Shown piece after piece: positions 1 through 64,000 of a stretch of 64,000 bases of DNA. Position numbers and translations under genes: made by a program. The stretch spans positions 4,712,001 to 4,776,000 of the forward strand of contig NW_027266273.1 of NCBI RefSeq assembly GCF_022045235.1, read 5' to 3'. Source of the stretch: Haliotis cracherodii (taxonomy: Eukaryota). Within the stretch, counting starts at the first letter, position 1, and each line of letters begins with the position of its first letter. The notes under the pieces were generated by a model that saw only the letters and a list, made by a program, of their open reading frames with translations, did no database searches and was not told the DNA's origin.

Positions 1-245
1 ATGATCATTACTTCTTCTATCAACTACTATTAAATGGCCCTGACAGGGCTGCAGGGATGTGGCTGAAATATTGCTGCTGTGGCACAAAACAACATTCACT
101 CACATGGGATTTGAAGGAAAGTGCTCAGAAAAGCTGCATGCAAAAATTGCTAAAGAAGAAGAGATTTTCGTTAAAGAAATTAGACAACTTTTTTTGTAAG
201 CCTGAGAGTCCCACATTGTAACTTAATATTCTTTAACTTCCTCAG

Positions 246-548
246 AGCCCCCAGGCCCCCCACTGTTTGTGCGGGTCAGCAAGATCACCAAGAAGTCTGT
301 CACTATTGACTGGGGTACGCCCTCTGACGATGGTGGCTCCAAGATCATTCGCTACCACATCTACACCTCAAAGAAGACAAGGGGAGAGTGGAAGGAGGTT
401 GCCAAGGTCAAGGCCTTTGACTCTGACTATGAAGTACAAGATCTTGAGGAAGGCCAAGACTACTTCTTCGCTGTTGCTGCAGAGAACGAAGTCGGCATTG
501 GCAAGATGGCAGAAACAGAAGCTGCTGCTAAGCCCCAGAAACCAATGG
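246..548 (+). CDS. FN3 exon 1 (phase 1-1)
   Basis: ctcag|AGCCC...ATGG|gtaag; EPPGPPLFVRVSKITKKSVTIDW...KPM. Confidence 0.93.
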
Positions 549-15500: not shown

Positions 15501-18500
15501 ACAAGCACAAGCACAAGATTTGTCATACATGCTTGATCATGGAGCATTAAACCTTTGCCTTATGTGTAAAGCCCATTCCTCCTCTAGTTTACTATCTAGT
15601 CCCTTGGGAATTCCAAGTCAGAATATGTCCCAGGCAACTGATGCTTGTCACACATGACTAAATGGATCAAGTGTCTATCTCATCCTATGGATTCAGGACA
15701 ATATGTAAACAATGTTTATTTTTATCATGTTAGAAATCATACAATTAAACTTCAAAATTATCCTGAACTGCAATAAATGAAAGTAACTTTGGTAATAAAA
15801 ATTGTATTGTCCTATATAGAAATGGCATAATTACTTTTATATTGAGGATCATCGTGGTGCACAGTATACAATTTTGTTGGTATTTCTAGGTTGATCCTGA
15901 TACAACAACACTGAAAGTTGAAAACCTCCTCGACAACGTTGGCTACTTCTTCCGTGTAATGGCTGAGAACGCCGTCGGAGTGGGTCAGCCTCTTGATAAT
16001 GAATCTCCCATCATTCCAAAGAGTCCATACGGTAAGGAATAAAAATATATTCATGAAGTTGTTTCTGTTATCGTTTTATTTTTGAATTCTCCAAGAAACG
16101 TCACTTAGATTTGTTAATATATGCATGTACGTTTTAATCTGAAATCAATGTTTTTGAAAATCAAACTTCATATTGATATCTGAGACCAAATATAACTTTT
16201 CTTGACTCCAATTTCATTTTTGTATTTCTTTCACTTTTAGGTCCACCAGGGCCCCCTACTGGACCAATCAAATCAATGCAGATGACCCGCGACTCTGCAA
16301 CCTTCCAGTGGGAACCTCCAAGTCAAGATGGTGGCTCAAAGATTACTGGCTACATCATAGAGAGGCGAGAAGAAGGCAAGAAGTCCTGGATGTATGTTGG
16401 CCGAAATGATGCCGACAATCTTTCCTTCTCGGCCACTGGACTGACCGAAAATATGGACTACTACTTCCGAGTGTACGCTGAGAACAAATATGGCCGCAGT
16501 GATGCTCTGCAGTCAGAAATTCCCATCATACCTAAGAGAGTATTTGGTAAGTACAAGATGTTGTTTTATTCATTTGAATTATTCTGTTTGAAATCATACA
16601 GTTTTAGGTGATGGTATTTTCATTTTTTAAAGTTTTTCATTTTTATAATATATATTTATTATATATTGTATTTTTTTTAAATGACCAAATTCATAAAGAA
16701 AATTATACATAAGTCATTCAGTTACAATGACTTAGCAGTACAGTGATATTTTCAGTTACAAATTGTAACGTTCATTCAGAAATGTTTTGTCTAGAAATTG
16801 TATGATTTCAACTTAAAAATACTTAAATGAGGCTTCTGTTTTGCCCACAAGTGAGTATTTATCACAGCTTATGTTAGTACTGGTTTGTTTTTGGAAACAC
16901 TATTATCTAGAAATTTATCTATTTTGTATCACAGATTCATTGAGTTTAACTTTTTAAAGTTCAATTTCTACCATAAGCTGTTGATGGATACGTCAAGTGG
17001 GATTGTCCACTGGTTTTGGGTTTGCAATGTGGGGGTTTGAACCTGTTTCCATGACGACTTCTCTGAGGCATGGTGAAGGGGCGTGGCACCATGTACGCAT
17101 ATGGCCAGACACGCCCCCCCTTTCTGTGTGACATGGTGTGGACAGTATATTCCTTAGCAGATGTACTTAGACCCATTAGCATTCAGCCCACAGTACAGTC
17201 TATAGGTAGTTATGTTATGTACATTCTTACATAGGCGATACTTTCTGATAAAAGTAAAAATATATTTTGAATTACAAACCACAGATATAAAAAAATAAAT
17301 GACATTTACAATTTTTAAGGGATTTGATAAAAGACATTTTATCATATTGTTTTATCAGTGAAGATTTTGATTGCTGAATTCAACATTTTCATTTAAAATC
17401 ATGATAAATATTCATGCATACATTCAGAGTATTTTTTCTGGGTTGGATGTCAAAGGTCAGTTTCAGTCTTGACCTGAATCAGTGAGTCTATCTGATATAT
17501 TCAACCCACAATCTGCAATATACCTTCACCCTAGACTTAATACAACTAGTATAAATACTATGGTTGAGTACATGGAATAGAGGTCCTGTTTTTTCTCCAT
17601 TTCAAGTCTAGTTCCAACAATAGATGCACGATTGATACAGTAGGTGTGTGATCCGTTTTTATGATTAGAGTTACCTCCCCTTCAAGTGAGTGTTGGCAAT
17701 TAAGAGTGACAAAGTCACATGTTGACTGGTGAATATAACTGAAAAACTGTTCATGCAATGCATGTATGACAGCATGAAATACTATTCCAACATAAAATAT
17801 TACCACATGGTAATATAATGATAGAGTTATCTCCCCTTCAAATGAGTGTCAAAAATTAATAGAGACAAAAATCACATGTGGACTGGTGAATATAACTGAA
17901 AAAATGTACATGTATTCACAGTTTTCATGTAAAGCTCGTAAGATAGCATGAGATATTATTCTAACATGAAATATTACCGCCTGGTAATATAATAATAGAG
18001 TTATCTCCCCTTCAAATGAGTGTCGAAAATTTATAGAGACAAAATTGCCGGTAAATATAACTAAAACACTATACATATGTTCACAGTTTTCATGTAAAGC
18101 ATGTTATGTGGTATGAAAGACTATCATAGTATTACCACCTGGTAATACAGTGGAGCCTCATTGTGTCGAGGGGTGGTCTGGCAGCCTAGTGGTTAAAGCG
18201 TTCGCTTGTCACGCGGAAGACCCGGGTTCGATTCCCAACATGGATACAATGTGTGAAGCCCATTTCTGGTATCCCCCACCGTGATATTGCTGGAATATTG
18301 CTCAAAGAAGCATAAAACCATACTCACTCACTCATTCGTGTCAAACTTTAAAGTGTCAAATTCCCTGTTGTTTCTGACTCATTTTGGAGTCCCAAGTATT
18401 TCAGTTAAGCATAAATTCCCCTGATGTCTCGAACCCTACATTACTCAGCCATTTTTCCAACTCCCCACAAGTTCTCCACAACGAGGTTTGACTGTTTAAT

Positions 18501-21500
18501 GATGGACACAAACACTTCACATCGTGGCTAAATAAAGGGGAGATAGCCTCAGTCTGACATCCAGCTTTATCTTAACCCTTAGTGCCTCTATATGTATGAT
18601 GTCCTTGCTTGTCTCACTTAACCTTCTTGCCTTGTGTTTGTGGTGCATGGTGCATGTGGAAATCTTGTAATAATTCTTTCATTATGTCATTTCTTTCAAC
18701 TTGTCAGTCTGTTTATGATATTACAGTCAAAATGTTTATTATCGAGACATTTTTCAAAACTTGTAACACGAGTAGAGCTCCATGTTGAGCCAATTTCATT
18801 GGTGTAATTGTTTTCAAATAAAGTAATGTTTCCCTGTTCTATCCTAAACAGACTGATTGTACTTTAACTTTTTAATCAGTAATTTGTTAACCAAGACTGC
18901 TGCTGCTCTGTGAAGCTGTTGAAGCATCTAACATTGAAATTATTGGTTCAGTTTTCGTTGATCTTCTGTATACTTACTTACCTTTCCTCTGGTGCTTCTT
19001 TGCAAAATTAACAAAAGCTTCCTATGAGATATGGTCTCAGAAGTTCAAACATTTTGAGGAGGAATAACACCATGATAATTGAAAGGATTATATGTAATTT
19101 ATTTCCTATAACTGTAAACAAGTAAGGATGCATTGGAAAAGATATTGTGAATGAATTGAAACCCAGAATTCTAGACTGCATATTTCTTGATTATTATTCG
19201 GAAAAATATATGATATCATGTTATCTATCTATAGCTGCTTTAACAATTGAAATTTGAATTTAATATATATTTTTTGGGGAAAACAAATTGACAGGTGTAT
19301 TCATGTAATTTTCAAAATTATGAATCCTTGACGCTTTCTCTGCATCCTTCTATGAGATTTATGAGATTAAAAAATATATTATCTTGATTATATATCAAAA
19401 TTTTCTATAAGACACATTGTGGTATCTACAATAATCTCTATACTCTGTGTTGGGCTTCCTTGATTAGCCTGTGTATTATTTCTCAATTCTATTGGGATGA
19501 ATATCCTGGACTCATTTGTTACTATAGCTTCGATTTGAGCCAGATTCAAATTAGGTGACAACTAAGATTGCCATCAAATCAAATAACTCTAAGACTGAGA
19601 GAATTTCTGTGCTAAGCTGGTCAAAGGCTAGATGAAGATAGTGACGTCTCTTTCTAATGAAGCTTCGATGGCAAATGGGTCCAGGGTATTTATTGTACAA
19701 AATGGAGATATAATACCCTGGATAGTAGAGGATGAGTGTTGGAAAGTCAATGGTTGACGTGTCAGCAGCTGTCTTGGTTAACTCTCTGTGACAACTCACA
19801 TTCTCAACGCTGCTGTTTCTCTGTTTCTCCAGAATACGCTGGGAATAGTTGGCTCCGCCAGGCAAACCTTCAACCATGTATTAATGTCTACATGATTCAG
19901 AATCTAACAAGATACGAGTATATCTATCGTGTATACGCTGACAACCCCCTAAGCTCTGTGTGGGATTCCATAGACTTGAGTTCTATTGCGGGACGATTTT
20001 AACAAATTGATTGTTATCCAACCACACATTATATTCTCCTAACAACTTATGGTGTGAAAGTTCGGAAATTTGATTTAATTTGACGCGTTCTCATTTCTCT
20101 TAACATATTAACCACTAATTTATTATTCATTGCTAAAAGCTTTCTGATTTAATTTTTAATGACTAACATTTGTACATTCTATGACTAATATCTGTACATT
20201 TATGTATGGTAACTTTGTTAACATTGTTAGTTTTCTTATTTCACTGATCTCTTTGTTGATATTGATATTAACATATTTCCTTGGCTGTGTCTGGAGCATA
20301 TTCACCTGATGGGCATTAATCATCAGAGATTGTGAGTTGTGTTCATTTTCTGCATTTGCGTACCATTATTATTGCTTCTTTCTGCGCTGAAGCTGTCATA
20401 TAGACGCATGCGAATATTTGGCTTTTCCAGCTTTTGAGGTATTAACAATGTACCAAAATTGCATAAATTTCAGGAAACATGTCATAATGTCAAAAGTAAA
20501 TATTGATGTTTGGGGTGTTTCATTTTGGCCTTTACTTAAACATAATTTGTTTCCTTTTCTGTTTGAAATTTATTAATGTGTCATTTTCGGTGACTGTAGT
20601 TATCTCCCCTGACTTGATATCTACAGTTGCAATTATATTGTTGGGCACATTTGTAGATGCCAAACAGCAAAGGAAATAGTTCTGTTTAAAAATGTTTATT
20701 GAAAATATAATGCGCTTTGCTTAAATCTGAAATATTTATCGATGGAAAACAAATCTCTAATGATTTCGGCCCTGACCCTTTCACTTGTATTATGCTCCAT
20801 ACACAGATGATTCTATGTGTTAAACTGTCATTTGTGAAGTCAAATATCTCCTCTTTAATTGCTATAGGTTTCCCTCGGTGAATAAATCTTTATAACTGTT
20901 GGCGATGTTATTTTGTTATCAATATTGTACCATGTTGTGTATATTAGTGTAGACTAGATGTAGTCAATGTTGTCTATAACAGCACTCACGTTGCATACAC
21001 AGACAATATGTTGTCGTATTACAGGATCAATGCTGAATGGCTCACGATGCATGGATAGGAAAGTTTTTGGATCAAGTGTTATAAAACAGTTACATGACAG
21101 CTATAATAAAGTGGTATTTTAGAAGCTGTAATGTCCATGAACACTAATGGATTCAACTTATTTATTAAGTTATTTGGAAGTTTTACACAAATGATTCATT
21201 CTTGGTTTCAACATCAGAAAGTCTGATGCTGATCTCAAAGAAATGTCATTAAAATCAGATCTTAGTTCACCCTACCACAAAACAAAGATTTGAGGACATT
21301 ACGGGTCATGTCATACGACCTTACATTCGCCCAATCAGGGCGTTGCTTACCAGATCAGGAAAGTGACATTCGGAGTGTATTTTCTCTTCATGTAACCTCG
21401 AAAATGTTAACACAGGGTTTTACGAACGACAGTTACAGGTTTTATGACCAAATCCATACAAGCTGGGCCATTTATTAACCATTCTAGAATGTTGTTTTGT

Positions 21501-24500
21501 TCAGTTTTCAAATTTTTAATGAAAAACTTTGACAAGATGTGTTTCGAAGGATAGTCACCAGTTTGAAACTAGTCCCGAAAGTAAGAAAGATTGCCTTCTG
21601 ATTGCCCAATATCGACTTCTGCTCGATCAAAGTTGCGTCAAAGTTGGTTGGTCACATTTCGTGAAAGTTCGGTCTGACGTGACCCACATTGGGCTGTCTT
21701 CAGATCTTTGTTAAGGTGTAGCAAGAACTAAGATTTGATTTTAATGAGATTGATCTCAAAGCATTGACTGAAGCTGTTAAATGATGTTGTAGAAGTTACT
21801 CCCTCTGAACGTCTGTTGTGATATCAATGATGTGAAGTGGTTCTAAAACAATACATCAAAATTAGATAGTTTCTGAAAAAGTTCTTCTACTGAATCTGTA
21901 GAATAAAAAGAAGTACAGTGAAGTCTTGTTAAATCAAACTCCTTGATCTCAAGATGATACGTCTCAGTAGAAAATCGTATTTCGAACTGTGAATATCTTT
22001 TCATTTTCTATGGTGATCAGGATATCTAGGTAACGCTACAGTTTTCGTTTAGTCAGTTATGTGAGTTTGTGACCCTTGATCTTCAGACTTTCCATGTATC
22101 TTGCATATAGCATACTAAGAGCATCTACACATGGCCACACTCACTTGACTCACATAAGCCACACTGACTCACAAATACATGTTTCCTGTGTATCACACCT
22201 CACAAGGCTCATCTATCAAGTTAGTTGCACTCAATGTTTTTACTCATTTGCAAATAATGAACATTCTAATCTGAAAATAACTCATATTACATCATGAATG
22301 ACTGAATTTAATTTAAAATTCGTTCATGAAACTTTCTCACTTATTTTTTTTGTCAACATTTTTTCTAACATTTTGTCATCTTCTGGTACTTAGATTACTG
22401 GAATTATGTGTTAATTTAAAAAAAGTTGACTAAAACAAGATTTTAAGAGTAAACTACTTGGAATAAAAGATTTCATGAAAAGATGCAAAGGAAAAGTATT
22501 CTTTGAAAGAAGTCTGATTTCATTATGGCCAGGGACTCCTTGGGGAAGAACCTTACTAATTCTTTTGAATGGGAATAAACATCATCCTCTGTGAGGATTT
22601 GTGGAATTACCGCTGCAAAATAGATCTTCAAGAACATTAGAACAGTCACAAGTTTGTCATGATAGTCTGCGACTAGCTGATGTTAAGCTGGTCTGTGTAG
22701 ACTTTGTTTCCGTGTAATATGTTTGTGTGTACTGTCCACCCTGTCATACTTGGCATCCAGAGTCCGTTCCGGGAATGTCGTCACTTTTACCAAAGTCAGG
22801 TAAACTTTGTGTACGTGTTTATTGTGTTTCTGTATGTGCAGTCACACCCCTAGCTGTCTCAGGGCCTATAGTCCTCAACAATTGTGCCAAAGTGACATTT
22901 GGCTTAGGGGTTTACCTCCAAAACCTGAAGGTTTAATAGGACTGTTTTATATGTTGTGTATGTTAAGTGTATGTACTGTATGTCATCTATATGAGCTGTC
23001 CATTGGATGTCATTTAGCTGTATGTCACTTGATATTACTGTCCGTCACTTGACATCAACTGTTGATGGGATGAACATCAGAAGTACGGCAGCAATTTCAT
23101 GGGTACATGTTTGCTTATTGTCAGTTGTACTTTAGCTGAATATCAAGAGTACATTGGCTGTACATCAACTATACACCGGTTTTATGTCAACTATACCGTA
23201 TTCGACATGATAAGCTCTCAGGGTGCTCTCAAAATTAGAAATAGGGTCTCTTATTAGAATAAAATTTTGGTGAAAAACAACAGAGTTGAAAGATCGTAAA
23301 TTTTGTGGTTTATGCTGACAGCCTGAAATGTCTGTCTGTGTGTATTATACATGAATGATATATTTTTCAAGAATTAAATTACCCATAATTAAGGGTGCAT
23401 ATAACACGCGAGTGTGTACTATACACGAATAAATAAGTCTTGTGTGTATTGATCAATCGGAAGGAATTGGAATTGTTCACTAGCCAATATATTAGCAAAT
23501 ATTGCCGTGGGCGCTTATTAGAGCGGGGCACTTATTACGTCGATAATGGTATATTGGCTATATATTGGATAAACATCAGCTGTACGTCAATACACAGTGC
23601 ACCTGCTGAACAGAAGCTTAACGCTGGCCATAGATTGGATATACATTAGCTGTATGTCAGCAATACATTGACAGAGTATCCGATGAACAGAGGCTTAACA
23701 TTGGCCATAGATTGGATATACATTAGCTGTATGTCAGCAATACATTGACAGAGTATCTGCTGAACAGAGGCTTAACATTGGCCATATATCGGTTATACAT
23801 CAGCTGTATGTCAGCAATACACAGTGCACCTGCTGAACAGAAGCTTAACATTGGCCATATATCGGATATACATCAGCTGTATGTCAGCAATACATTGACA
23901 GAGTATCTGATGAACAGAGGCTTAACATTGGTTATATGATGGTTGAACAGAGGTATACATTGGCTGTACATAAGGTCTACATCGACTGTACGTCTGCTGA
24001 ACTAGAAGCTTAACGCTGGCTACATGTAGCCTAAACATCAACTGGACATCGGCTACACACCAGAGCCCTGCACAAAACCTGCACAAAACAATCGTAGCTA
24101 TATCAGATTGCAATCCTAGGCTACGACTGCACACCATACACTTGCACAAAGCCATTGTAAGTTAAGATCATTTTCAGCTGCAATTGAAATTTACAATTGT
24201 TCTGGACTAAGATTATTGTAGTCCCTGAATTAACTTGAACAAAATGGCATACAAGATAGGGTCTGTTTCACAAGTAATCTTTACTTTCAAACATTACCAT
24301 TTCATTTTGTTTAAATGTGTGATTCGAACTGACACTTTAGCAGCATGAAGAACGCATTTCAGAAATATCATGTCAGAAATATCTTGAATCACAATAGTGA
24401 ACCACATATGAGCCGATAGCTAAAAGTACCATTACCACCAGACTCAAATGGTGAAAGAAGTGTTAAATAGTGGTAACCTTATCGATGACGAAGAGTTTAT

Positions 24501-27500
24501 TAAAACAGGTGAATTCATCTCGCATGAACTCAACTAAGCAAATATCTTAAAAGTCATGCTCCCTACCTATAAATGAAAGGAAATATAAAATTTAGAACAG
24601 TCATCAGAATGAATAAAGGTTGTGTACACCTGCATCACTTCGGGCTTTCCTCCCACATCAAGCTGACACACCATGATATGACTCGAATAATGTTAAAAGC
24701 AGCATTAAACCCAACTCACTCACTCACTATCAAATCATTAACACACAAAATGTAGATAACAGTACGAAATCAATGACTTTATTCAGTGCAATAATGCAAC
24801 CAAGCACCACCTATTCTATTATCAGCCAATCAGGAAATAGGTGTCCAACAGTGGGTGTGGCCTTTTGGTCATATTCTTTTCAGTTTCAGAAACCAAAGAA
24901 AAAATTGCTTGATTAGCCAAAAATAAAGCCATGGAATTTACAAAATAATAGCTAGACAGGTATCCCTGAATCTGTTTTCTGCACACCAACATGGAGGGCA
25001 AACGTGCCTCATCCTCCAGGTCTTGGGAGGTTCATAAAATCAGTGCCGACTCAGCATGTAAAGTTTGCAAATTATGACGATTTAGTAGTCTATATTCTTT
25101 GATAACTCACAGGTATTAATGTAAACAGAAATAAAGAAGTAAGTTGGTTAGCATAAACATAAATTATTATGAAGCATTCTTAGTTAAGTAAGGGTGGTGG
25201 ACTGGTCCAGTGGTTGAGGCATTGGCTTATCATGCCCAAGTCCGGGGTTTATTTCCTCACAGGGTGTGGAGCCCGTTCTTGGTGTCTCGCTTCTTTTAAA
25301 TGAATGGAATTATTGCTAAAAGCAGCATAAAACCACCCACCCACTCACTCACTCACTCACTCACTCACTCACTCACTCACTCACTCACTCAGTGAGAATA
25401 AAAGTTTATTGTTTATAAGCTTTAATTCATTATACTTTACAGAAAATGAATACATGAGTTGATACAGAGGAATTGATGTCTGCAGCAAAATATTACCCAA
25501 AGAAACTTTTCTCCCTGGTGAAAGGGAAGTAACTCTGAGTTGAACTCTGTTTGAGATAAGTGGGTGAAAGATGTTTGTTGCAAATATTGTCAATTATTGA
25601 CCGAGTTCAAGACATGTTTGGCTTTGCAATCAGTCTGATTAGCTGAACCAACCATTTGTTTGGCAAAAAAATTGGTGTTTGAATTATGCCATTGTAAGAG
25701 TGCAACGAAGGCGTTCTGTAACACTGACGAAAATTAATAATTTCTAAACAAGAACATCACTTTAAAGAAAAAATAAAATACAACATTTAGAAAGAGTTGG
25801 TCTTTTCACAAATTTCAAATAATTAATTGTATTTTTATGGATGATTTTATTATCACAAACAGTTACCTCTATTTAAGCTTGTGCTATAAAAAATATTTTT
25901 TGGTTCAGTTTGAGAATTTTGACAGTTAATAAGACCTAAAATATTTTTTACTTGAAAATATTCATCTTTATTTCAACGATTCATATCTCCAAAATGGCTG
26001 AAATATTAAGAGTGTACACTTGAAGTAACATAGTTGTACTTTCAAAGGAATGTTTACCTAACTGGAGTGGGGTTCGAAGTTGTTTGTCTACCTAAGACAT
26101 TTTCTCCTAAACATTATCACATCAACCCATTCTACTCCAGCGAGGTAATCCATTAACAAAACACTTTAAAAACAAGGGCCTGCTATTTGTCCAGTTTATA
26201 AACAGCAAATATTCCGGCAAGACTGAACTGTTTAATCACATGCTATGCGAACTTGTATTTAGCACGTGTTTACTCGGACCCAAATTCACATGATCAACAC
26301 TGTCTCCAGCCCCTTGAGCCATCGGCCTTCTTGTCTTGGGAATGGGGGGTATTTATAACCTACAGTTGGGAGGGACCTGACGTGCTACACGTTAATGTCC
26401 AACCAATGCAATACAAATCTCTAGGCTCTGTCATGGAATTTGAAAAAGCTGGTTATTTGGGCATGGATTGCTGAAGAAAACTTGTAAGGTTAAGTACACA
26501 TTTTCTTTATAATTTTTGGAGAAATTGGCAACGTTTAATATAGAAGTTTGTTCTTTACATATTTTTCTGCTTAGTTTTATTTTAGAATCTTAAATGAGTG
26601 AAGTGGGTGAAATGAAGAAGCTGTCTTTTATGTTTCTCTCAAAACACATGTATTTATTTCATGATATCACTAGTAAAACCTTCATTTCGGACTACATTCA
26701 ATTGACACTGTTATTGTGAATATAAGTGCTTAAAAACAGAATCCACATTAGTGTATTGCAATGAATTATGCAGAATATAGTCCTGTCCTTTATAATGATG
26801 CACCAACTCACCATGTGGCATTGGGTGTCCTAGTGGTGAAGGTGTTTGCGTATCACACCTAAATCCTGGGTTTGATTTCCTACATAGAAACAGGGTGCAA
26901 TGTCCGTTTGTGATATTCTAGGCCATGCTTTGTCTGGAATATTTCAAGGAGAGAATGTTGTACATCTGCATCTGTGCATGTGATTAGATAAATATGTACT
27001 AGAACTGATTTAGGACAGTTTCTTCATTGAGTTAGATCACAGCCGAAGGCTCTGCTGGAATAGGACTGGTGTTTGTCATTTGAGGCATGTGTGGTATAAT
27101 GATGGCCTGGTATGTACTTCAACCAATACACATTTACAACCGTGCTGCTCAAGCTGCAAGCTCCCCGAGACCGACACAAATGCCTAGGTCGTGGTTTTGA
27201 CTGGAAATGTTCAAACTGTTCACTAGACACACAGACACTATTAGTGGAACTCGGTAATTTTGTTGTGCTCCAAGACTGATGGAAGACCTTATCAGGATAA
27301 TAAGGATGGGTTGTGATAATGATAGTATTATCACTTGTCCTGTAGCTATAACTAACTCTATTGAGCTATCGGTTCATTGGGGATAACCTGCTCACATATT
27401 CAGTAAGGGGGACAAATGGAAGTGCTAGAGATGGAGAAATGGATATTTGCCCACAAATCACACAAGATGAAAAACAAACAAACAACAGTTTTTCCAACCT

Positions 27501-48500: not shown

Positions 48501-51500
48501 ATTAAAGCATCATTGATGGATGGGGAATGCTTAAATGGATTTGTTGTGCTCTTACAATTATGTTGGATTTTCTATCAATTCAGTTTCACTCCTTCATGTT
48601 TTTGAAGTACAGGTTAATGCACCTTTTCAATCAGTTTTCACTTACCTCCATCTTTCATGAATGTTAGATATCCCTGCCCAAAAATTATAAATTATTAGTA
48701 TATATATCATATATCATATGGTATAAGGGGCAGTGGGGTAGCCTAGTGGGTAAAGTGATCGCTGGTCTTGCTGAAGACCTTGGTTTGATTCTCGACATGG
48801 GTTCAATGTGTGAAGCTCATTTCTAGTGTCCTCTGCTGCGATATTGCTGGAATATTGCTAAAAGTGGCGTGTAAGCCATACTCACTCACTCATATAGAAT
48901 AGTTAGTCTGTCTTACAGACCCTGATACAAATATATATCAAATACAGCCCATGCAAGTCTATAATGTTTGGCAAGTCTAGATTACTGCAGTAAATGAAAA
49001 TGAAGAGAATCACTGGGCACCTTTTTATTATATTTTATTAAGATAACTGAACAACTGGTTTTTTTCTGTACGATATGTTCATTTCATAGACTAGTCTAAT
49101 AGAATAGTATAAACAGTGGTTTGATTCATTACTATCTAGTATAAAGCCACACTGAAGACAATTAGCTGTCCGACTTTAGTGGATGATGATACTGTTAACC
49201 CATTAATAAGAAGCATCGGATACAGTGATGCTTATGTTAAAGTCATCTTGATATGTAACTTACCTGCATATTTCAGTTCGTTTACCTGATGCCTGGCACG
49301 AAATAATCACCTGCTGCTGTGTATGCCATGTAGCAAGCCTTGGCAGGTGATGGGTGGGGTCGATTTAGTGATGAGAGAAGCATGCAGGAAGGGGGTTGTT
49401 TATCAGGGTCTGGTTGCTAATAGCAACGGTTCCAGTTTTACCCCCGAGAGGATGGTGTCAGGTTGGCTAATGTTTTAACTCCCGTCTTCATTCCTGCTAT
49501 GGAACTTGGTCCCTTCAGTACTTCTGAACCAGTTTTAGACCTATACTCACTCAATCACTGTCAAATTTATGCTGTTGTAAAGCAACACTGTGAAACCTTT
49601 ATCATCCATTGCATTTGTACAACATGTCTTCACTGAACATTCCTCTGTAATTTAAAAACAAACACATTTAAATGTATTCAAATTTTTATCCAGACAATAA
49701 TGCTTTAGCCTTCAAGGAAAACCAAAAAATATTTGAGAGCTAAAATAAATCTAAATTGTTGCCAAAGTTATTTTAGGAGCCACCTGACACTGTTTCTACC
49801 TGCACGTGAGTGTTTGTAAGTATGTAGGCGTGTGTCTGGGGGAGTAGGTCAGTGTGTACCTCTCAAGGGGAATCTGCTGTAGGAGTCGGATGTCAGACAG
49901 ATAAACAACTTCTAGCATTGCCAATACTCCTTCAGTAATCATGCTTTCACTGGCTTATTTTCGGGCTGGTACAGGAGCATGTGACTAGTGTACCTTTAGA
50001 AGGGCGTTACTGCTATATATTCCTATCTTACAGTGTTGTTGGGTTTATTTCTCGGCTAGGAATTCCTACGGAATAATAATGATTATTTCATTTGAAATGT
50101 TCAAATTCTTTAGGTATAAGTGAAATTTAAATGAAATTTAAAAAATAACATATTAAGATGAACATTTAGGATGTAAGTTTGACAGTGTAATGAATACCAG
50201 GTCAATACAAGGTATTTATTTTCCAGTAATTCAAGATCACATGTCTGATATTGTAGAATAGGAAAATACTTTTTATAAGTAAATAATTATGGTATTAAAT
50301 ATTTTGACAATATGATGCGTATTCTGGTAGGATGGAGTGTTCTTTATGATTCACCAAGGTACGTGCTTTGTGGTAATGTTTCCCCTGACATTTTAACTAA
50401 TTTCCTGCGATTCCGAAACGAAAGGTCACTGCTTACGTCAGTGTACCCTGTCACTTGTACAGAGCAGTCAGAGTTGTTGGTCTTGAATCTCTGCCAGTTG
50501 GACACCAGGTGGCGCTGTTTTGGTCATGCTCAGGCAATGAATCGCCAGTATATGGTTTCTCAACATTCACAGAATAACAAGTTATCAAACTAATCTGATA
50601 ATAAGAAATGCCAGAAATATTTACAACCGAAGATTAAATTCAGATTCAAATATAGAAAATTATCTATTCTTCTATGATAAAGGAACTTATAAAGTATGTT
50701 TTATGTATGTAAGACATGTAACTTCTTTAAATGTTTTATTGGTAATGAGACTTAGGAATGTGCAGATTATAAATATTGTGGGCTGGTTTGGCAATAAATA
50801 CCTGTAGTGGCTCGCTGGCTTAGCAGTTATATAACTCTGTGTTTATCATGAAAGATAATAAGGAGCTACATGCTTGAGGCTGTGTTAATTATGGTGGTTC
50901 AAGGCAGTGGAGGAATGGTTGTGATCACACTTTTTATCATCAAACTCCGATATCAAACTGTGAGGTTGATGTATGTGGAGGTTGTTGATGTATGTGGAGG
51001 TTGCATGGGCTATGTTAGAACATATTCTTAGTTTCTTCTCACATTCCTTGTTTATGTCAATAAATATTTACTTTTTCTTCATCATGAGATGATATGAACA
51101 TATTTGACAAGACAGTATAAGTATTATATTCATTTAATACTACCCAATGAAGATCGGTCTTCGACAACCCATACTTGTCCCAGTAGGTGACTAACAAGAC
51201 TGAGTTGGTGCATGTCATCATATCAGCATAGATCAATGCTCATGATGTCAGTCTTTGGATTGTTTGATTCAGACTTGATTCTTTACAGACCGCTGCAATA
51301 TATCTGGCATATTCCAGATTGGGGCTTTAAACAAGGAATGAACAAACCATCATTCAATTCTGAGAAATATTCTGGATTCTCATTCTGATTTGTTTTGGAG
51401 TGCCAAGAAGATTAAATAACAAGGTTTACACTACCAAGATAGTGAAAATCAATCTGGGATGCGGCCATTTGTGAGATGCTATGTATAGACACTAATGATC

Positions 51501-54500
51501 ACAAATGAGACAGAAGCTCTAAAATATCCAATAGCAGACCAAATTGCTCCAGACAACTTCAATGAGACCCAGCTAGTTCCCTGAGCAGAAACTCATTTCT
51601 GTCAGAGCAGATTACACCATGTGTGTACCATCCATTAAGTATTTCACAAACTCCTGGAATTTTTTACAACCAATCTCTTGAAGCTGCTTCAGTTTTCCGT
51701 CAGGAAGCGGGGCTGTTAAACCTGGCATGAATGAGGAGTTGGTAACATCTCTTGAAAGAAACAAGTGTTGGTATGCTGTTAAACAAACTGTAAACCCCAG
51801 ACTTCCAAGTACCCGTGGACAGCTTTTTATGCTACTCAGAAGAAGTTAAAAAACAACTGATTTTTCATGTGATTAGTTAATATGACATGGCTGGTAGGTA
51901 TTGCAACAAAGAGCCTTCCAATTGTGGGCTTGCTTTAACTTGTTTTGAGTATAGTATATATAAGGGTTCTTTCAACTCTGTTCAAAATCATTCAAAATTG
52001 TGTTTAAGATAAAGAATTGTAACCTTTTTGTAATTCTTTTAAAATATTTACCAAGAATTTGTTATACTTGTAGTGATATTTTTATGACATTAAGTGATAA
52101 ATTCCCATATAGAGGCATAGTCTTATGAATGTCAAGTACTGTATTTGTTGAATAAACAATTGTGTCAAAATAATAGCCAAAAAATAAATTGATCCAAATC
52201 AACACTCACTATCTCATGTTAATTGTTTAGTTCCATTATCTAAGTTAAGTCTATATATTTGCATATTTATCTACGGCAAGATCTACCTCTTTCAATACAA
52301 AACATATATGTAGCAAGCCAAGCTTCCTGCTTGTAAAATATACAAAGATGTTTCTGGTTCAAGAATCAAAGAAGCAACAAATCTTTAAATAACATTTTTC
52401 AGTCCTCATCACTGAAAGAATGCACAAAGCTATGGCGTAGTTTACGACTGACCTACTTAACTGTTGCACATAAACACTGGGAGAAAATAGTTTGATCTGA
52501 TGTAAAGCATGCGCAGTGGTTACCCTGTCGGGAAGCTATTGTCAGGAACAGGTGTAGATGATGCCGTCATCAGCAGCCATGGTGCAAGAAGCCCCTGATG
52601 GAAGATGACCCTCAATTATCTATAAACAGTCTCGATATAACACTGAGGACGAGCCAAGCTCTAACACTGTAGAGACTTTTTTTATGTACATGTCAACATT
52701 ATCTATTTAGAAAATTAAAAATAGATTCACCCTTAAATATTTATCCTGGTTCAAATTACTTTCTCTTAAGATTTTACTCTTTGCAATGCCATAATTAGAT
52801 TTTGGATCAATTTCAAGGTAATGATGATATATAGTTAGTTATGATGAAAGGAATATTTTCCAGTTTATCGACTGTTCTTAATAAACTATTAATTATCAGA
52901 TTATCTAGATAAAACCTATCATCAAGCATTCCATCCTTATCAAAATGTTCCAAAAATGTTGGTATGTTTCTTAATGAAAACGTCAAACATTTATGAATAG
53001 CATCAAATCAGGTAAAAATAGCTCCACCCAACAGTTTCATGCAAAACAAGTGTTAGACATTTTAAAGCCGTGATCCAATCCTGAAGGTCAGAGAGTAATA
53101 TTACAAGAGTATTTGTGTGGACAGGCGTGCCCCACATGTGTGTTATCACAGCCGATATCTCCCTGCAAGGTAGAACCTCTACAGGTATACCATCATGTCA
53201 GCTGGATGCGCCGACGTAACTAAAGGTTCCGTTCTTGGCACAGGCTTAGATCATTCCAGCTCTGACTTCCTCTGTTTTTTGTTGGCGTGTAGGTGAAATT
53301 CCTCCTCTCTTGCTCCTCACACAGTCTGGTAGCTTTAGATCGGTGTAGGCATTTGTTCTTTAATTCTCCCATTTCACGTTTTGGCGTAGATGTTTATCAC
53401 AGTTTTTTGTCTCGGATCCGGTGGAACAAACTGACTTTTGAGACACATCTTGGGTCTCGTTTCCATTTGAAGGGCACTTTTGATATTGGGATAAAGTTTG
53501 CTGTGGAGTTTTAATTTTCGGACCCTTCATTATATTCCTTGTTGGATATTTGGGTTTTCATCATCACAAAACCTGATTGTTCTGCTTTTCCATTTTGGAT
53601 GGACTGTGTGCTGTGACTTCAAAACCGTTTGGAGAGATTGTGTGGAGCTGTAGCTAATTTGGCTTGTTGAGTCACAAAGTTTTCGAGTTGTGACTCTTAT
53701 TCTTCATTGTGGATTAAAGTGACTAAGTCAGGTTGTGGTTTTGAAAATCAGTGAATATTCATTGTGGAATTTCGCACCACAATGAGCCAGGAATAATAAT
53801 ATTTTGAGAGTGATAATTTTTTTGTGGTGTTGTGTGAATCTAGCTACCTGCAATCATGAGTTTGATGTTTATTTTGCCCAATCATAAGTGCCCTTCAAAA
53901 GACTGTCCATTCCATGCATCCGAGATGTCATCCAAAAAGAAACTATTTGAGGCCCCTGCTGAAGAAATACAGCTAGCAGGGGCCACTGGTGCTGGAATTG
54001 AAGATGGTGGCAAATTGAGAAAAGGTCCAAAAAAGAAAATCCGAACGGCATGGAAGACTGCGGATGTGGAAGCTGAAGAAGAGAGAAGAGGAAGTATGAC
54101 AGGGAGTGTGGCTGAGGACGATGTTGTGACGGTGTTGTCTGTTGACACGGGTAATGAGTCGGGGTCAAGTGAGTGTGAGGCCAGGTTTACACTTGGGTCT
54201 GTGGCAAGTGACAAAGTAGATGTTGAAGACGTAGAAACTGAATTTTACGCCGACACTGGAATTGATTCCCTGGCTAGCGATGATGTACATTTGGATGATA
54301 TTCAGGAAGAAACCGCTGATATTGCCCTTACAAAACTTGAGAAAATTGAAGAAATGGAAATGCCACTTGTTGAACAAGATATTGAGGAGTTTGATGTGGA
54401 TGATATAAAAGAAGAAATAGTTTTTGCGACGGAACCTGAAGTTCCTCTTGTGAGTACTGCCACGGAACAGGAGCTCATTCTAAAGTCGGAGGAACAGGTT

Positions 54501-54817
54501 GTTGAAAGTGCTGTGGCCGTTAGGGTTGTACGAGAGGTTTGTGAGGAAATAAAAGTTGCAAAACATGTGGTTGAGACGCAACAAATATACACAACAAACA
54601 TTCAGGAGGAGGTAATCCAGTCCGAGACACTGACAGAGACACATGTGGCAGTGGAAAGGTGCGTGTTGTCAGGCCTCAGTGTAATTCAACCTTGGATAGG
54701 ACGTAGTGAAAGTCAGGTTTGATAAGCTGCTTCTAATCGTCAAGGAGAGGTAATAGGCTATGATTCCTGTAAATGTTTTGAAATAACAGTGACTCTTCAC
54801 GTCATCTGCCCTCAGAA

Positions 54818-54852
<35 letters not shown>

Positions 54853-57800
54853 CATACATGGTCAAAAATGATTGTGATGGTGTCTATCTTCTCGGTCAAA
54901 TCATGGTCAGAGTACTTGATATATTACCTTGGTTAATGTGTCAGAGTGCATTCAAATTGCATTTTCAGCTCCCTGGGGAGTATAATTAAAAAAAAAACAA
55001 TTCTGTAAGCATAAAACAGATAATCAATACTCTCATCTGAGCTTAAGTAAAACATTAAGTCAGTTATGACATAATTTGTCAGCCACAGAAGCTAGTATGG
55101 CTGTTGATGACCTTCACCTTGCTTGCATGTTGTTATTGTTAGAGCTGTATTCTGAGAATGGAAAAGAAAGCTGGATGAGTTCAGGTATTCCAGTAGACTA
55201 CATTCATGGGTGAATATGATATCTTCACCTCATTGTACCAGTTTTTTCAGTATATATTTTAGTAACACATTTATGATTTTAAACATCTATGCATCCGCTG
55301 AGATCTTCTCATGACCACTATCAGGAACATGTTACCATGGAAACCTATGTCAGAACAACATGGTATTCCTATTCGAAAGGGAAATAGAAAGACTACGTCA
55401 AATCACTTTTTGGCATGTTGCTCAATAAATGCATGTTCTGAATCGGTTCCAAGTTTTACACCAAGAACCTGCCCAAGCATTTCAAGTGTTGCTAAGTGAT
55501 TTTATATATACTGCTGGGTATTTGTATGTACTTACTTTAAACTGACAGATTGGAGTTGTTTTAATCCTATCATTATCCCATAATTCCTCTGCCACAAATT
55601 TTGTTGTGTGAAGATATCTGAAAAAAAAACGGTAGGAAGTTGTTAAGAGATTGATAGGAAGATTAGATGTTTCGCTTGGCTCACAGGGCAGATATTAGCG
55701 TTAATCTCGGCTGTATTTGCCATTATGAACTGTATAAAAAGCACTTGCATCCACTTGATAAACTGCCAGACGTCTGGGAAGCTGCTTATGAGATTTATCT
55801 GCAGGAAAAGTAACGTTCTTACTTGATTATTTTCTCTTCTTTGTAATCAAATGGTTATCGGTGTAATTGAAACATACATATCTACCTAAGAACTTGTTTT
55901 GACTTTATTTTTATGGGAGTGTGATATTAGTTATAGTTTGATGATAGTTGTCATTCATGGTGCCTCATATATAGCTTGGGGGTATACTAAAACGAATTCG
56001 AGGATTTTCTTGGATATTCAGTGTTATTGGTCAAGAGCTGACCAAGCTGTTTATTTCATCACTGTCTGTTGTTGGTGTGATCCTGTGCAGAAGTATATTA
56101 GTCACTACAGGTCTAATCAAGACTTCTTTTTGGACTTTTTGTGAATTTTAATGAGGTTTGCTTTTAAGGCTCAGTTGACATATTACATGGGACTAGGCCT
56201 GGTTCAATTGGCAGTTCCAGCAAGTTTGATTCAAGTACGGTATTCGACGTAATAAGTGCCCCGCTCTAATAAGCGTCCACGGCAATATTTGCTAATATAT
56301 TGACTAGTGCACGATCCCAGTTAGGACCCCTTCCAATTGATCAATGTACACAAGACTTACTTATTCGTGTATAATGCGCACTCATGTGTTATATGCACCC
56401 TCAATTATGGGCAATTCAACTCTGGAAAAATATATCTGTCGTATGTAAACATTTCAGGCTGTCAGCATAAACCACGAAATTTACGATTTTTCAACCAAAA
56501 TAATATTCTAATAAGAGCCCCCTATTTCTAATTTTGAGAGGGCCCTGGGAGCTTATACGGTAATTCAAATCTCACTTTGTTGTTTGATGAGTCAAATTTG
56601 CTCCCGTATGTCAGTCTAGCAGATAGCAATTAGCCTAATTACACAGAGACAGTGTCCTATTGGCTTGAATCACAGGTTCTTCTGTCAGTACCTTACCTTT
56701 GCTTGGGTGTAAAAGTCTTTAAAAGTGACTTCAGGCTTTTGGTATTTAATTCAAGTTACTCACTAAGTTATCCAATCTTTGTAACTGTTAGGGGGCGGTC
56801 GGGTAGCCTAGTGGTTAAAGCGTTCGCTCGTCAAGCCGAAGACCCGGGTTTTGATTACCAACATGGATACAATGTGTGAAGCCCATTTCTGGTGTCCCCC
56901 GCCATGATATTGCTGGAATATTGCTAAAAGTGGCGTAAAACCATACCAACTCAATTGTAACTGTTTGGCCACCATGTTGTGCAATGTATCGTGGACCATA
57001 GTGATGTACTTAGTAACTCTATGCAAGCGGCCCACCTCGGGCTGATGTGTGGTGGAGTGGTTGTAAGGTAGCTGTAAGGAACGTAGCATGTTGTTGTTTG
57101 TAACCTTCTCCAGGATGTTGCTGATGAGGGTTCCCATGGAGACTGGAATATTACATGTGTGACTTTACAGGAGAGATTTGTTTGTTCTTGTTCCCTGTGT
57201 CTATGGTGGCATATTAAAGATGTAGGGTCAGAAGGACGTTCTGTTGTATATGCGAGGAGATGGGTTCCAATGAAATAATCAGTGAATCTGAGACTGGACA
57301 TCGCCAGACCATCCAGACAAACTCAACCAAAGTTTAATATTGATCACCTGTGACTGTTGTCTCATGTGGGGAAAAGAGTAAAATGTTACAATCAACGACA
57401 TTCACAGAAAATTTGAAAAAACCTGTGTGACCACTCTAGAAAGAGCTACAAAGTCTCTGGTCTATATTTAATTTATCTTTTTCCCTTCCAGGTTGAAAGA
57501 TGGTGAAGAAGTCCTCCCAAGTCCACGTGCCAAAGCCACATACAAAGATGGCATGGCAACACTTGATCTCAAAGACCTTGAACCTGAAGATGGAGGGAAA
57601 TACACCTGCCGTGCTACCAACAGCTTCGGAGATATTGAAACCACAGCAAATCTCAAAGTTGAAGGTCAGTACGCTTCTCGTGTGAACAATGGTGGTGAAG
57701 ATGAATGGTGTGTCTGGAGAGTATCAGTTGTTTTATTCTAATCTTTCATATCTGTATGTCTTCTAATATAGAAGGATAACATATGCATTTAATTTCAGTA

Positions 57801-63854: not shown

Positions 63855-64000
63855 GTGAGTTGGCAGTTCCAACTGCATCAACATTAATGTGACATCATCA
63901 CAATGGTTTAATTAGAATTAGTGTCATATCTTCAGTGTATGATTGGTAGGGTGAAGAAACGTGTGTAATGAAAGTGGTACTCGATTCCTCGAGTTAAATA

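What the first reader, a model, noticed from the sequence alone, without database searches (positions are those of the whole stretch)
16547..57664. One giant gene that may be cut into three separately expressed modules (FN3 rod, kinase, Ig tail)
Seen: most introns are 0.1-2 kb, but two are 12.7 kb and 14.5 kb. The first holds a phase-1 terminal exon with a stop (19833) followed by a candidate phase-1 first exon (24991). The second holds several phase-2 ATG exons, including an 803-nt one. Each matches the phase of the flanking constitutive exon. Established: smooth-muscle MYLK makes telokin from an intronic promoter after the kinase, and Drosophila Strn-Mlck uses internal promoters and alternative ends. 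Inference: this locus yields a kinase-less FN3 rod, a short FN3-Ig-kinase-Ig protein and kinase-less Ig-tail proteins besides the full-length giant. It is also possible that the rod and the kinase module are two separate genes.
Basis: partly seen in the sequence, partly recalled or inferred. Interest (0 to 1): 0.85.

Follow-up and report, generated by a model that had tools for sequence, protein, structure and literature searches.

The report
Abalone giant muscle kinase gene isoforms
A huge abalone muscle gene of the titin/MLCK kind has two oversized introns that each hide one real extra exon, so it probably makes shorter products as fly and vertebrate relatives do, but no RNA data could be read.

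Summary
The two outsized introns (16547-29279 and 42986-57491) are real. They are the largest of about 133 gaps between coding pieces (median 516 nt).

Only two of the intronic candidate exons rise above chance:
- **19833-20002:** an orphan half-FN3 with an in-frame stop, behind the best-scoring acceptor in either intron. It is a plausible kinase-less terminal exon, or a dead relic.
- **53856-54658:** a single-copy, 292-codon acidic open frame. Its start region and an invariant LLPNHxCPxxDCPFH motif are conserved in other gastropods. It has a strong donor and no usable acceptor, so it is a genuine first coding exon.

The 24991 mini-exon and the other "phase-2 ATG exons" are what chance gives.

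Intron 2 splits one Ig domain, and no spare Ig halves lie inside it. So kinase and Ig tail belong to one transcription unit.

Splicing 54658>57492 is in frame but would start mid-Ig. A rival splice, 54658>54816, ends the protein after two codons, which would make the exon a nested small gene.

Verdict: a new member of a known kind, partly supported.

The parts
233..16546 (+). 22 FN3 domains, nearly all one exon each with phase 1 at both ends. They are the last part of a 49-domain FN3-only rod that starts 21 kb upstream of the window. The last donor is at 16546 (TTG|GTAAGT).
   Evidence: Local FN3 HMM hits of 102-145 bits. Pfam fn3 E 1e-12 for the last exon. Donors listed. Rod periodicity of 3 domains.
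16547..29279 (+). Intron 1, 12,733 nt. It carries interspersed repeats and minisatellites.
   Evidence: High-copy repeats at about 18170-18337, 21242-21752 and 23194-23555. Tandem arrays at 23553-23931 and 27820-28289.
19833..20002 (+). Orphan half-FN3 exon candidate. It has a phase-1 acceptor, 55 codons and then TAA. It is either an alternative terminal exon that would end the protein before the kinase, or a dead relic.
   Evidence: Acceptor score 12.1, the best of 1541 AGs in the two introns. FN3 HMM positions 54-91 at 14.7 bits, against a null maximum of 5.9. 37% identity to the FN3 at 815-928, with no DNA-level paralogue. Single copy. Pfam's general fn3 model does not detect it.
24991..25057 (+). 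Judged a chance ATG..GT.
   Evidence: Donor score 0.0, and 53% of intronic GTs score as well. 14 better phase-1 ATG..GT candidates exist in the same intron.
29280..36840 (+). Kinase module. It comprises FN3 (29280-29576), FN3 (about 30794-31118), Ig (31278-31382 plus 31556-31732), Ig (32058-32330), FN3 (about 33327-33611) and kinase exons (about 34266-34466, 34980-35121, 35704-35903, 36360-36512, 36795-36840).
   Evidence: Pfam fn3, I-set and Pkinase hits. Local HMMs. PDB matches: MYLK4 81 bits, Aplysia twitchin 74-77 bits. Site scores.
42868..42985 (+). First half of the first post-kinase Ig domain (strands A-C, ending ...AAEIMW). Phase-2 donor.
   Evidence: Pfam I-set positions 5-34 of 90. 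Local half-Ig HMM 63.8 bits. Acceptor 13.0. Donor 6.9.
42986..57491 (+). Intron 2, 14,506 nt, which splits one Ig domain. No other Ig half lies inside it.
   Evidence: Repeats at about 43245-43515, 48728-49094 and 56236-56556. Minisatellite at 44661-44975.
53856..54658 (+). Acidic first coding exon of 267 codons plus 2 nt. pI is 4.3 and 24% of residues are D or E. The N-terminus MSLMFILPNHKCPSKDCPFH carries an invariant H-x-C-x4-C-x2-H motif. Donor AAG|GTGCGT, phase 2.
   Evidence: 292-codon open frame, larger than in any of 200 shuffles. Single copy at DNA and protein level. Relatives at 97%, 47% and 25-31% identity, including Nucella KAL8585015.1, all sharing the motif. Donor 8.7, upstream AG at 53844 scores -3.1. 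AlphaFold: disordered apart from a helix at residues 202-265.
54816..55010 (+). Rival second exon for the acidic exon. It has a strong acceptor (ccctcag|AAGATGATG...), gives a stop after two codons (…VAVERR*), runs into an (ATG)n microsatellite, and has ATTAAA at 54985.
   Evidence: Acceptor score 11.2, second only to 19833 among intronic AGs. Sequence. Poly(A) hexamers.
57492..57664 (+). Second half of the split Ig domain (strands C'-G). Phase-2 acceptor.
   Evidence: Pfam I-set positions 36-90 of 90, E 3e-13. Acceptor score 15.1, higher than any intronic AG. The junction 42985>57492 restores ...AAEIMW|LKDGEEV....
58555..63856 (+). Further Ig domains of the tail, most split after the strand-C Trp. 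The tail continues to about +80.8 kb beyond the window.
   Evidence: Local half-Ig HMMs.

Best explanation
The window holds the middle and 3' part of one very large titin/twitchin/MLCK-family muscle gene of an abalone. On the + strand its order is: Ig exons from at least 158 kb upstream, a 49-domain FN3-only rod, then FN3-FN3-Ig-Ig-FN3-kinase, then about ten Ig domains.

The kinase and the Ig tail must be joined across the 14.5 kb intron, because that intron cuts one Ig domain in two and no alternative halves exist. This is shown directly by the sequence.

Two real extra exons sit in the two oversized introns.

(1) Exon 19833-20002 is a diverged second half of an FN3 domain with the best acceptor in either intron and an in-frame stop. 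It most likely serves, or once served, as an alternative terminal exon. It would give a kinase-less Ig/FN3 rod protein, as Drosophila Strn-Mlck isoform R ends early. This is inferred.

(2) Exon 53856-54658 is a conserved first coding exon for an acidic, largely disordered head with an invariant His/Cys motif. It is transcribed from a start site inside the intron. The coding status and the start are shown by conservation. The promoter and the downstream partner are inferred. The in-frame partner is the half-Ig exon at 57492, which would give an acidic-head plus Ig-tail protein of about 1,300 residues.

A separately expressed short kinase protein has no support.
For: - Domain map and split Ig.
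- Introns are outliers.
- Half-FN3: best acceptor of 1541, 14.7 bits against a null maximum of 5.9, correct frame, longest of the strong-acceptor reading frames that resembles a domain, single copy.
- Acidic exon: open frame beyond all shuffles. Single copy. Conserved start region and motif in six gastropod lineages. Similarity ends exactly at the donor, with R|CV (= AG|GTGYGT) shared with the 47% relative, and the read-through tails are unrelated. Strong donor and no acceptor.
- The rod's 3-domain periodicity stops at 16546, and the next FN3s are of other kinds.
- Precedent: Strn-Mlck IsoR has its own promoter and early termination (PMC4328745). MYLK encodes long MLCK, short MLCK and telokin (PMC7037368).
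Against: - No RNA evidence at all.
- 54658>57492 would start at I-set position 36, so the first 58 residues after the head could not fold as an Ig. The head ends in a predicted helix and cannot supply the missing strands.
- A nearer strong acceptor at 54816 gives an immediate stop.
- No database protein joins the acidic exon to Ig domains, though length limits and clustering could hide one.
- The half-FN3 is invisible to Pfam's general model. No relative of it could be found. The nearest AATAAA is 880 nt past its stop.
- There is no TATA, CArG or CpG signal upstream of 53856.
Confidence: 0.5

Rival explanations
1. The acidic exon belongs to a small independent gene nested in the intron. It is spliced 54658>54816, removing a 157-nt intron, so translation stops after two more codons (…VAVERR*, 269 aa). 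The transcript ends near ATTAAA at 54985. A less likely variant is left unspliced (288 aa). It shares no protein sequence with the giant gene.
For: Acceptor 54816 scores 11.2, second best of all intronic AGs, and is the first strong acceptor after the donor. A stop follows at once and ATTAAA lies 170 nt downstream. This reading avoids the half-Ig problem. Nucella annotators list the homologue as a stand-alone 223-aa hypothetical protein. All database relatives are 195-288 aa.
Against: Those short relatives look like open-frame calls on genomic contigs that read through the donor. No NCBI protein of 147-467 aa with this exon turned up for any abalone. The donor phase matches the strongest acceptor downstream, 57492 (15.1). 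The (ATG)n run at 54818 suggests unconstrained sequence.
Confidence: 0.3
2. The locus is cut into three separately expressed modules: a kinase-less FN3 rod ending at 19833-20002, a short FN3-Ig-kinase-Ig protein starting at 24991, and Ig-tail proteins starting at several phase-2 ATG exons.
For: All sites exist and are phase-compatible. Giant muscle genes of this family do use internal promoters and early ends.
Against: The 24991-25057 donor is at chance level. Phase-matched ATG exons are not enriched over the other phases or over shuffles. Only one ATG exon is conserved.
Confidence: 0.1
3. The rod and the kinase module are two separate genes. The rod gene ends with the 19833 exon. The kinase gene starts somewhere in 20-29 kb and never receives the 16546 donor.
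For: The rod's 3-domain periodicity stops exactly at 16546, and the three following FN3s are unrelated types. A stop-bearing exon with the best acceptor lies 3.3 kb after the rod. A free-standing MLCK-like gene (Ig...FN3-kinase-Ig) lies downstream on the same strand, so kinase modules can stand alone here. An in-frame ATG at 29210 lies in an open frame that runs through the 29280 acceptor.
Against: 29280 is a normal phase-1 internal acceptor, and no credible first exon was found. In titin, twitchin, obscurin and Strn-Mlck the kinase sits at the C-terminal end of the giant protein (established knowledge). 16546 is a strong donor at 9.7.
Confidence: 0.2
4. The half-FN3 at 19833 is a dead relic of a lost FN3 exon and is never spliced in. 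Intron 1 is simply an intron enlarged by repeats.
For: Only half a domain survives. No first half exists anywhere in 224 kb. A repeat ends about 80-100 nt upstream. Pfam does not detect it. The intron is full of interspersed repeats.
Against: At 37% identity to its nearest relative, a neutral relic should have lost its frame and its acceptor. Instead the frame is open for 55 codons in the phase that fits every rod donor, and the acceptor is the best in both introns.
Confidence: 0.35

Closest known systems
Drosophila Stretchin-Mlck (Strn-Mlck)
   Same: A giant Ig/FN3 muscle gene with an MLCK-type kinase near the 3' end. Isoforms arise from their own promoters, and some end early and lack the kinase (PMC4328745).
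   Different: The abalone gene has a 49-domain FN3-only rod with a 3-domain period and about ten Ig domains after the kinase. Orthology was not tested. The isoforms here are only predicted.
Vertebrate MYLK / telokin (kinase-related protein)
   Same: There is a kinase-less product made of the Ig region after the kinase, started inside the kinase gene. The domain order Ig-Ig-FN3-kinase-Ig is shared (PMC7037368; PMC3114093).
   Different: Telokin is a complete Ig domain identical to the MLCK C-terminus. Here the in-frame join starts at I-set position 36 behind a new 267-residue acidic head and would carry about nine further Ig domains. No promoter evidence exists.
Twitchin (Aplysia, Mytilus, C. 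elegans UNC-22)
   Same: It is a giant Ig/FN3 protein with a C-terminal autoinhibited kinase followed by Ig domains. The kinase exons match PDB 1KOB at 74-77 bits.
   Different: This is not the orthologue. Another locus in this genome (C11:12.69 Mb) matches Aplysia twitchin at 125.6 bits for the same segment. Twitchin has mixed Ig-FN3-FN3 repeats, not an FN3-only rod.
Titin Novex-3 / Cronos, SPEG/APEG-1, UNC-89 isoforms
   Same: These are giant sarcomeric genes that yield truncated products through alternative terminal exons and internal promoters (own knowledge, not checked here).
   Different: They belong to different gene families. Obscurin-type kinases match this kinase worse (42.8 bits).

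Membership tests
Titin/twitchin/MLCK family of giant Ig-FN3 muscle kinases | Long arrays of I-set Ig and FN3 domains | tested here: met
   Pfam fn3 and I-set hits. 59 FN3 domains and dozens of Ig exons on one strand over more than 240 kb.
Titin/twitchin/MLCK family of giant Ig-FN3 muscle kinases | MLCK-branch Ser/Thr kinase domain flanked by FN3 upstream and Ig downstream | tested here: met
   Pkinase E 5e-12. Best PDB matches are MYLK4, twitchin and titin. The order is FN3 33.3 kb, kinase 34.3-36.8 kb, Ig 42.9 kb.
Titin/twitchin/MLCK family of giant Ig-FN3 muscle kinases | Autoinhibitory tail after the catalytic core | tested here: inconclusive
   An open frame at about 40.85-40.99 kb resembles the twitchin tail by eye only (…HKDYRDRTRHKVTW…). 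The PDB search found nothing.
Twitchin orthologue | Kinase closest to molluscan twitchin among the genome's paralogues | tested here: not met
   The window kinase scores 76.6 bits to Aplysia twitchin 1KOB. The paralogue L021 scores 125.6 bits over the same 68 residues.
Telokin-type kinase-less product | Independent transcription start inside an intron of the kinase gene | not testable with these tools
   Indirect only: a conserved start Met and motif, and no usable acceptor upstream.
Telokin-type kinase-less product | Reading frame continuous with the post-kinase Ig region | tested here: met
   54658 (phase 2) joined to 57492 (phase 2) reads …THVAVER|LKDGEEV… without a stop. One join in three would match by chance.
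Telokin-type kinase-less product | Product consists of complete Ig domain(s) | tested here: not met
   The 57492 exon covers only I-set positions 36-90. No first-half Ig lies between 42986 and 57491. The head ends in a helix.
Strn-Mlck-type early-terminating (kinase-less) isoform | Stop-bearing alternative exon upstream of the kinase, spliceable to the rod | tested here: met
   19833 has a phase-1 acceptor scoring 12.1 and a stop at 20000.
Strn-Mlck-type early-terminating (kinase-less) isoform | Use of that exon and a poly(A) site in transcripts | not testable with these tools
   AATAAA lies only at 20881 and 21105, about the background density of 0.7 per kb. No RNA data.

The most novel reading that the evidence does not exclude
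Gastropods have evolved their own telokin-like product. A promoter inside the intron that splits the first post-kinase Ig drives a conserved acidic head with an invariant H-x-C-x4-C-x2-H (possibly metal-binding) motif. That head is spliced in frame into the middle of the Ig domain and onto a roughly nine-Ig tail, giving a kinase-less thick-filament protein of a kind not described before.
Probability: 0.3. Interest if true: 0.55.

Novelty: new member of a known kind. Interest (0 to 1): 0.35.

Why it matters
Giant sarcomeric kinase genes in flies, worms and vertebrates yield kinase-less and truncated products that tune muscle mechanics. Molluscan muscle, with its catch and long-lasting tone, is a classic system for such proteins, but gene-level isoform maps are lacking.

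It also shows that the kinase here is neither twitchin nor the canonical MLCK. And it defines a small, unannotated, gastropod-restricted protein-coding exon family with an invariant His/Cys motif.

It is not a new principle.

Tried and rejected

**Homology of the half-FN3 open frame.** No candidate was found, not even itself. This is uninformative.

**Searches with the acidic exon.** Pfam, PDB sequences, the ESM Atlas and a full-text search for the motif all found nothing.

**Promoter and methylation cues.** There is no TATA, CArG or MEF2 cluster upstream of 53856 or 29280. CpG observed/expected is uniformly low, about 0.43. This is uninformative.

**Cassette-exon scan of both introns with strong sites and matching phases.** None was found.

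**Second Ig halves inside intron 2.** None was found. The best hit was 7.2 bits, E 0.8.

**Other intronic open frames.** No Pfam domain was found. The 162-aa frame at 44.6-45.1 kb is a 41-nt minisatellite.

**Rejected:** the acidic open frame as a transposon (single copy), and as a cassette exon of the giant transcript (the acceptor at 53844 scores -3.1, and that frame gives a stop).

**Joined exon models.** Junctions were only translated locally to read the frame.


Full report
**What is there**

The window is G000:C10:4712001-4776000 of a 1.18 Gb genome. An earlier follow-up in this scan calls it an abalone (s1-826171); I did not test that.

On the + strand lies a densely packed modular gene. 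A local HMM built from its own FN3 exons finds 22 FN3 domains between 233 and 16546, almost all as single phase-1/phase-1 exons. One domain is split, at 15302-15465 and 15890-16031.

After a 12.7 kb gap come:
- FN3 (29280-29576);
- FN3 (about 30794-31118);
- two Ig domains;
- FN3 (about 33327-33611);
- five kinase exons (34.27-36.84 kb);
- the first half of an Ig (42868-42985);
- a 14.5 kb gap;
- the second half of that Ig (57492-57664);
- more Ig domains to the end of the window.

**The gene is much larger than the window**

I fetched flanks from the same genome. The FN3-only rod has 49 domains (-21,092 to 16,546). It is preceded by mixed Ig/FN3 and a long Ig array, with sparser Ig exons out to at least -158 kb. 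The Ig tail runs to about +80.8 kb.

Rod domains are 53% identical at lags 3 and 6, against 36% at other lags. The basic period is therefore three domains.

**Which kinase it is**

The catalytic exons match the MLCK/twitchin/titin branch. MYLK4 scores 81 bits, Aplysia twitchin 1KOB scores 74-77 bits, and titin scores 53-56 bits.

It is not the twitchin orthologue. A paralogue on C11 matches 1KOB at 125.6 bits over the same 68 residues.

Two other paralogues are closer to MYLK4 (96-98 bits). One lies only about 86 kb past the window end on the same strand, in an Ig…FN3-kinase-Ig arrangement typical of a canonical MLCK.

**The observation**

I measured gaps between recognisable coding pieces from -78 kb to +81 kb. 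The median is 516 nt and the 90th percentile is 1.8 kb. The two flagged gaps (14,506 and 12,706 nt) are the largest, and the next is 5.2 kb. Larger gaps exist only among the far-upstream Ig exons.

Both introns contain high-copy interspersed repeats and minisatellites. These account for part of their size.

**Which candidate exons beat chance**

I built donor and acceptor matrices from 58 full FN3 exons of this gene.

| Site | Score | Comparison |
|---|---|---|
| Real donors (mean ± sd) | 7.2 ± 2.7 | – |
| Real acceptors (mean ± sd) | 9.7 ± 3.0 | – |
| Donor 25057 | 0.0 | 53% of all intronic GTs do as well |
| Acceptor 19833 | 12.1 | best of 1541 AGs in the two introns |
| Donor 54658 | 8.7 | only 12 of 1848 intronic GTs do as well |
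| AG before 53844 | -3.1 | – |
| Acceptor 57492 | 15.1 | – |

ATG-to-GT pseudo-exons with a decent donor are equally frequent in phases 0, 1 and 2. The counts are 17/14/18 in intron 1 and 15/16/16 in intron 2, within about two standard deviations of shuffled sequence.

So phase matching of "several ATG exons" carries no information. The 24991 exon is not credible.

**The half-FN3**

The frame after 19833 matches FN3 HMM positions 54-91 at 14.7 bits. Over 224 kb in six frames, nothing else lies between 6.7 and 30 bits, and reversed or shuffled peptides reach at most 5.9 bits.

- It is 37% identical to its nearest FN3 and has no DNA-level paralogue.
- It is single copy apart from a repeat end about 80-100 nt upstream.
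- Pfam's general model misses it.
- No first half exists anywhere.
- The 55-codon frame fits the phase-1 donor of every rod exon and ends in TAA. AATAAA follows only at 20881 and 21105.

I read it as an alternative terminal exon derived from an FN3 second half, or as a well-preserved relic. The sequence alone cannot decide between the two.

**The acidic exon**

The 292-codon open frame exceeds all 200 shuffles of the intron, whose maximum was 213. It is single copy at DNA and protein level.

Database relatives are:
- a 97% identical 288-aa frame;
- a 47% identical group of 218-221 aa;
- four more distant frames of 195-223 aa, among them Nucella lapillus KAL8585015.1, annotated as a hypothetical protein.

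All share L-L-P-N-H-x-C-P-x-x-D-C-P-F-H near the N-terminus and a DTG-E-S…S acidic block.

Against the 47% relative, similarity runs from the first Met to R|CV. That is the translation of AG|GTGYGT. The read-through tails after it are unrelated and differ in length. This is what a conserved first coding exon ending at a conserved phase-2 donor looks like.

AlphaFold with this shallow alignment gives disorder plus one long C-terminal helix at residues 202-265 (mean pLDDT 50). No family, structure or paper matches.

**What it splices to is open**

The intron splits one I-set domain (Pfam positions 5-34 and 36-90). No other Ig halves lie inside it. It follows that:
- the kinase and Ig tail belong to one transcript;
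- 54658>57492, though in frame (…THVAVER|LKDGEEV…), would begin with a half Ig that cannot fold.

The first strong acceptor after the donor is 54816, scoring 11.2. Joined in phase 2 it reads R-R-stop, runs into an (ATG)n microsatellite, and is followed by ATTAAA at 54985. That would make a nested two-exon gene for a 269-residue acidic protein.

No database protein links the exon to Ig domains, and no abalone protein of 147-467 aa contains it. Length limits and clustering weaken both negatives.

**One gene or two across intron 1**

For two genes:
- the rod's periodicity stops at 16546;
- the next FN3s are of other types;
- a stop exon follows;
- a free-standing MLCK-like gene exists nearby.

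For one gene:
- 16546 is a strong donor (9.7);
- 29280 is an ordinary internal acceptor;
- no credible first exon was found;
- every known family member carries its kinase at the end of the giant protein.

I put about 0.2 on two separate genes.

**Comparison and verdict**

The closest known systems are:
- Drosophila Strn-Mlck, whose IsoR has its own promoter and early termination (PMC4328745);
- vertebrate MYLK with telokin (PMC7037368; PMC3114093);
- titin Novex-3/Cronos, SPEG/APEG-1 and UNC-89 isoforms, from my own knowledge.

This locus works like those on paper. Membership of the broad family is met. Twitchin orthology is not met. The telokin analogy fails on the "complete Ig" feature.

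It is a new member of a known kind, with one modest novelty: the conserved acidic exon family.

Noticed in passing
G000:C10 about 4,845,000-4,867,500 (window coordinates +133 kb to +155.5 kb; L019 holds one kinase exon): A second kinase gene lies on the same strand, downstream of the Ig tail. It has several Ig exons, a split FN3 (143.1 and 144.7 kb), a kinase exon 59% identical to the window's and closest to MYLK4 (98 bits), then a single-exon Ig at 155.2 kb. This is the layout of a canonical MLCK with a telokin-type last Ig.
   Followed up: partly
G000:C11:12693817-12694020 (L021): The genome's true twitchin orthologue. This kinase exon matches Aplysia twitchin 1KOB at 125.6 bits, against 76.6 bits for the window's kinase.
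   Followed up: partly
window -21,092 to 16,546 (flanks L010-L012 plus window): The FN3-only rod has 49 consecutive domains. Identity is 53% at lags 3 and 6 against 36% at other lags, so the basic super-repeat is three domains. Ig exons on the same strand reach at least 158 kb upstream of the window.
   Followed up: partly
window 53877-53915 (residues 8-20 of the acidic exon): P-N-H-x-C-P-x-x-D-C-P-F-H is invariant in all six homologues. The H-x-C-x4-C-x2-H spacing could bind a metal. It matches no Pfam or PDB entry.
   Followed up: partly
window 54818-54852: An (ATG)n/(GAT)n microsatellite of about 11 units starts two bases after the strong acceptor at 54816. In another frame it would read poly-Asp.
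   Followed up: no
window 29210 and 42840: In-frame ATGs lie 70 nt and 28 nt upstream of the acceptors at 29280 and 42868, in frames that stay open through the acceptor. A start site just upstream, as in vertebrate telokin, could give a short kinase protein or a complete-Ig tail protein. This is within what chance allows.
   Followed up: no
window 56236-56556; 23194-23555; 21242-21752; 43245-43515: SINE-sized interspersed repeats have many copies across the genome at 79-93% identity. The first look found tens of thousands of candidates. Related pieces recur in many small introns of the gene, for example 35.4-35.6, 37.8-38.0 and 58.2-58.3 kb.
   Followed up: partly
window 44661-44975; 27820-28289; 23553-23931: Minisatellites lie inside the big introns: 41 nt x 7.7, 35 nt x 13.5 and 77/150 nt x 4.3. 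The first creates a spurious 162-176 codon open frame and the local GC-skew peak.
   Followed up: yes
window 15302-15465 and 15890-16031: The only FN3 of the rod within the window that is split by an intron. The intron is phase 0, at HMM position about 65.
   Followed up: no
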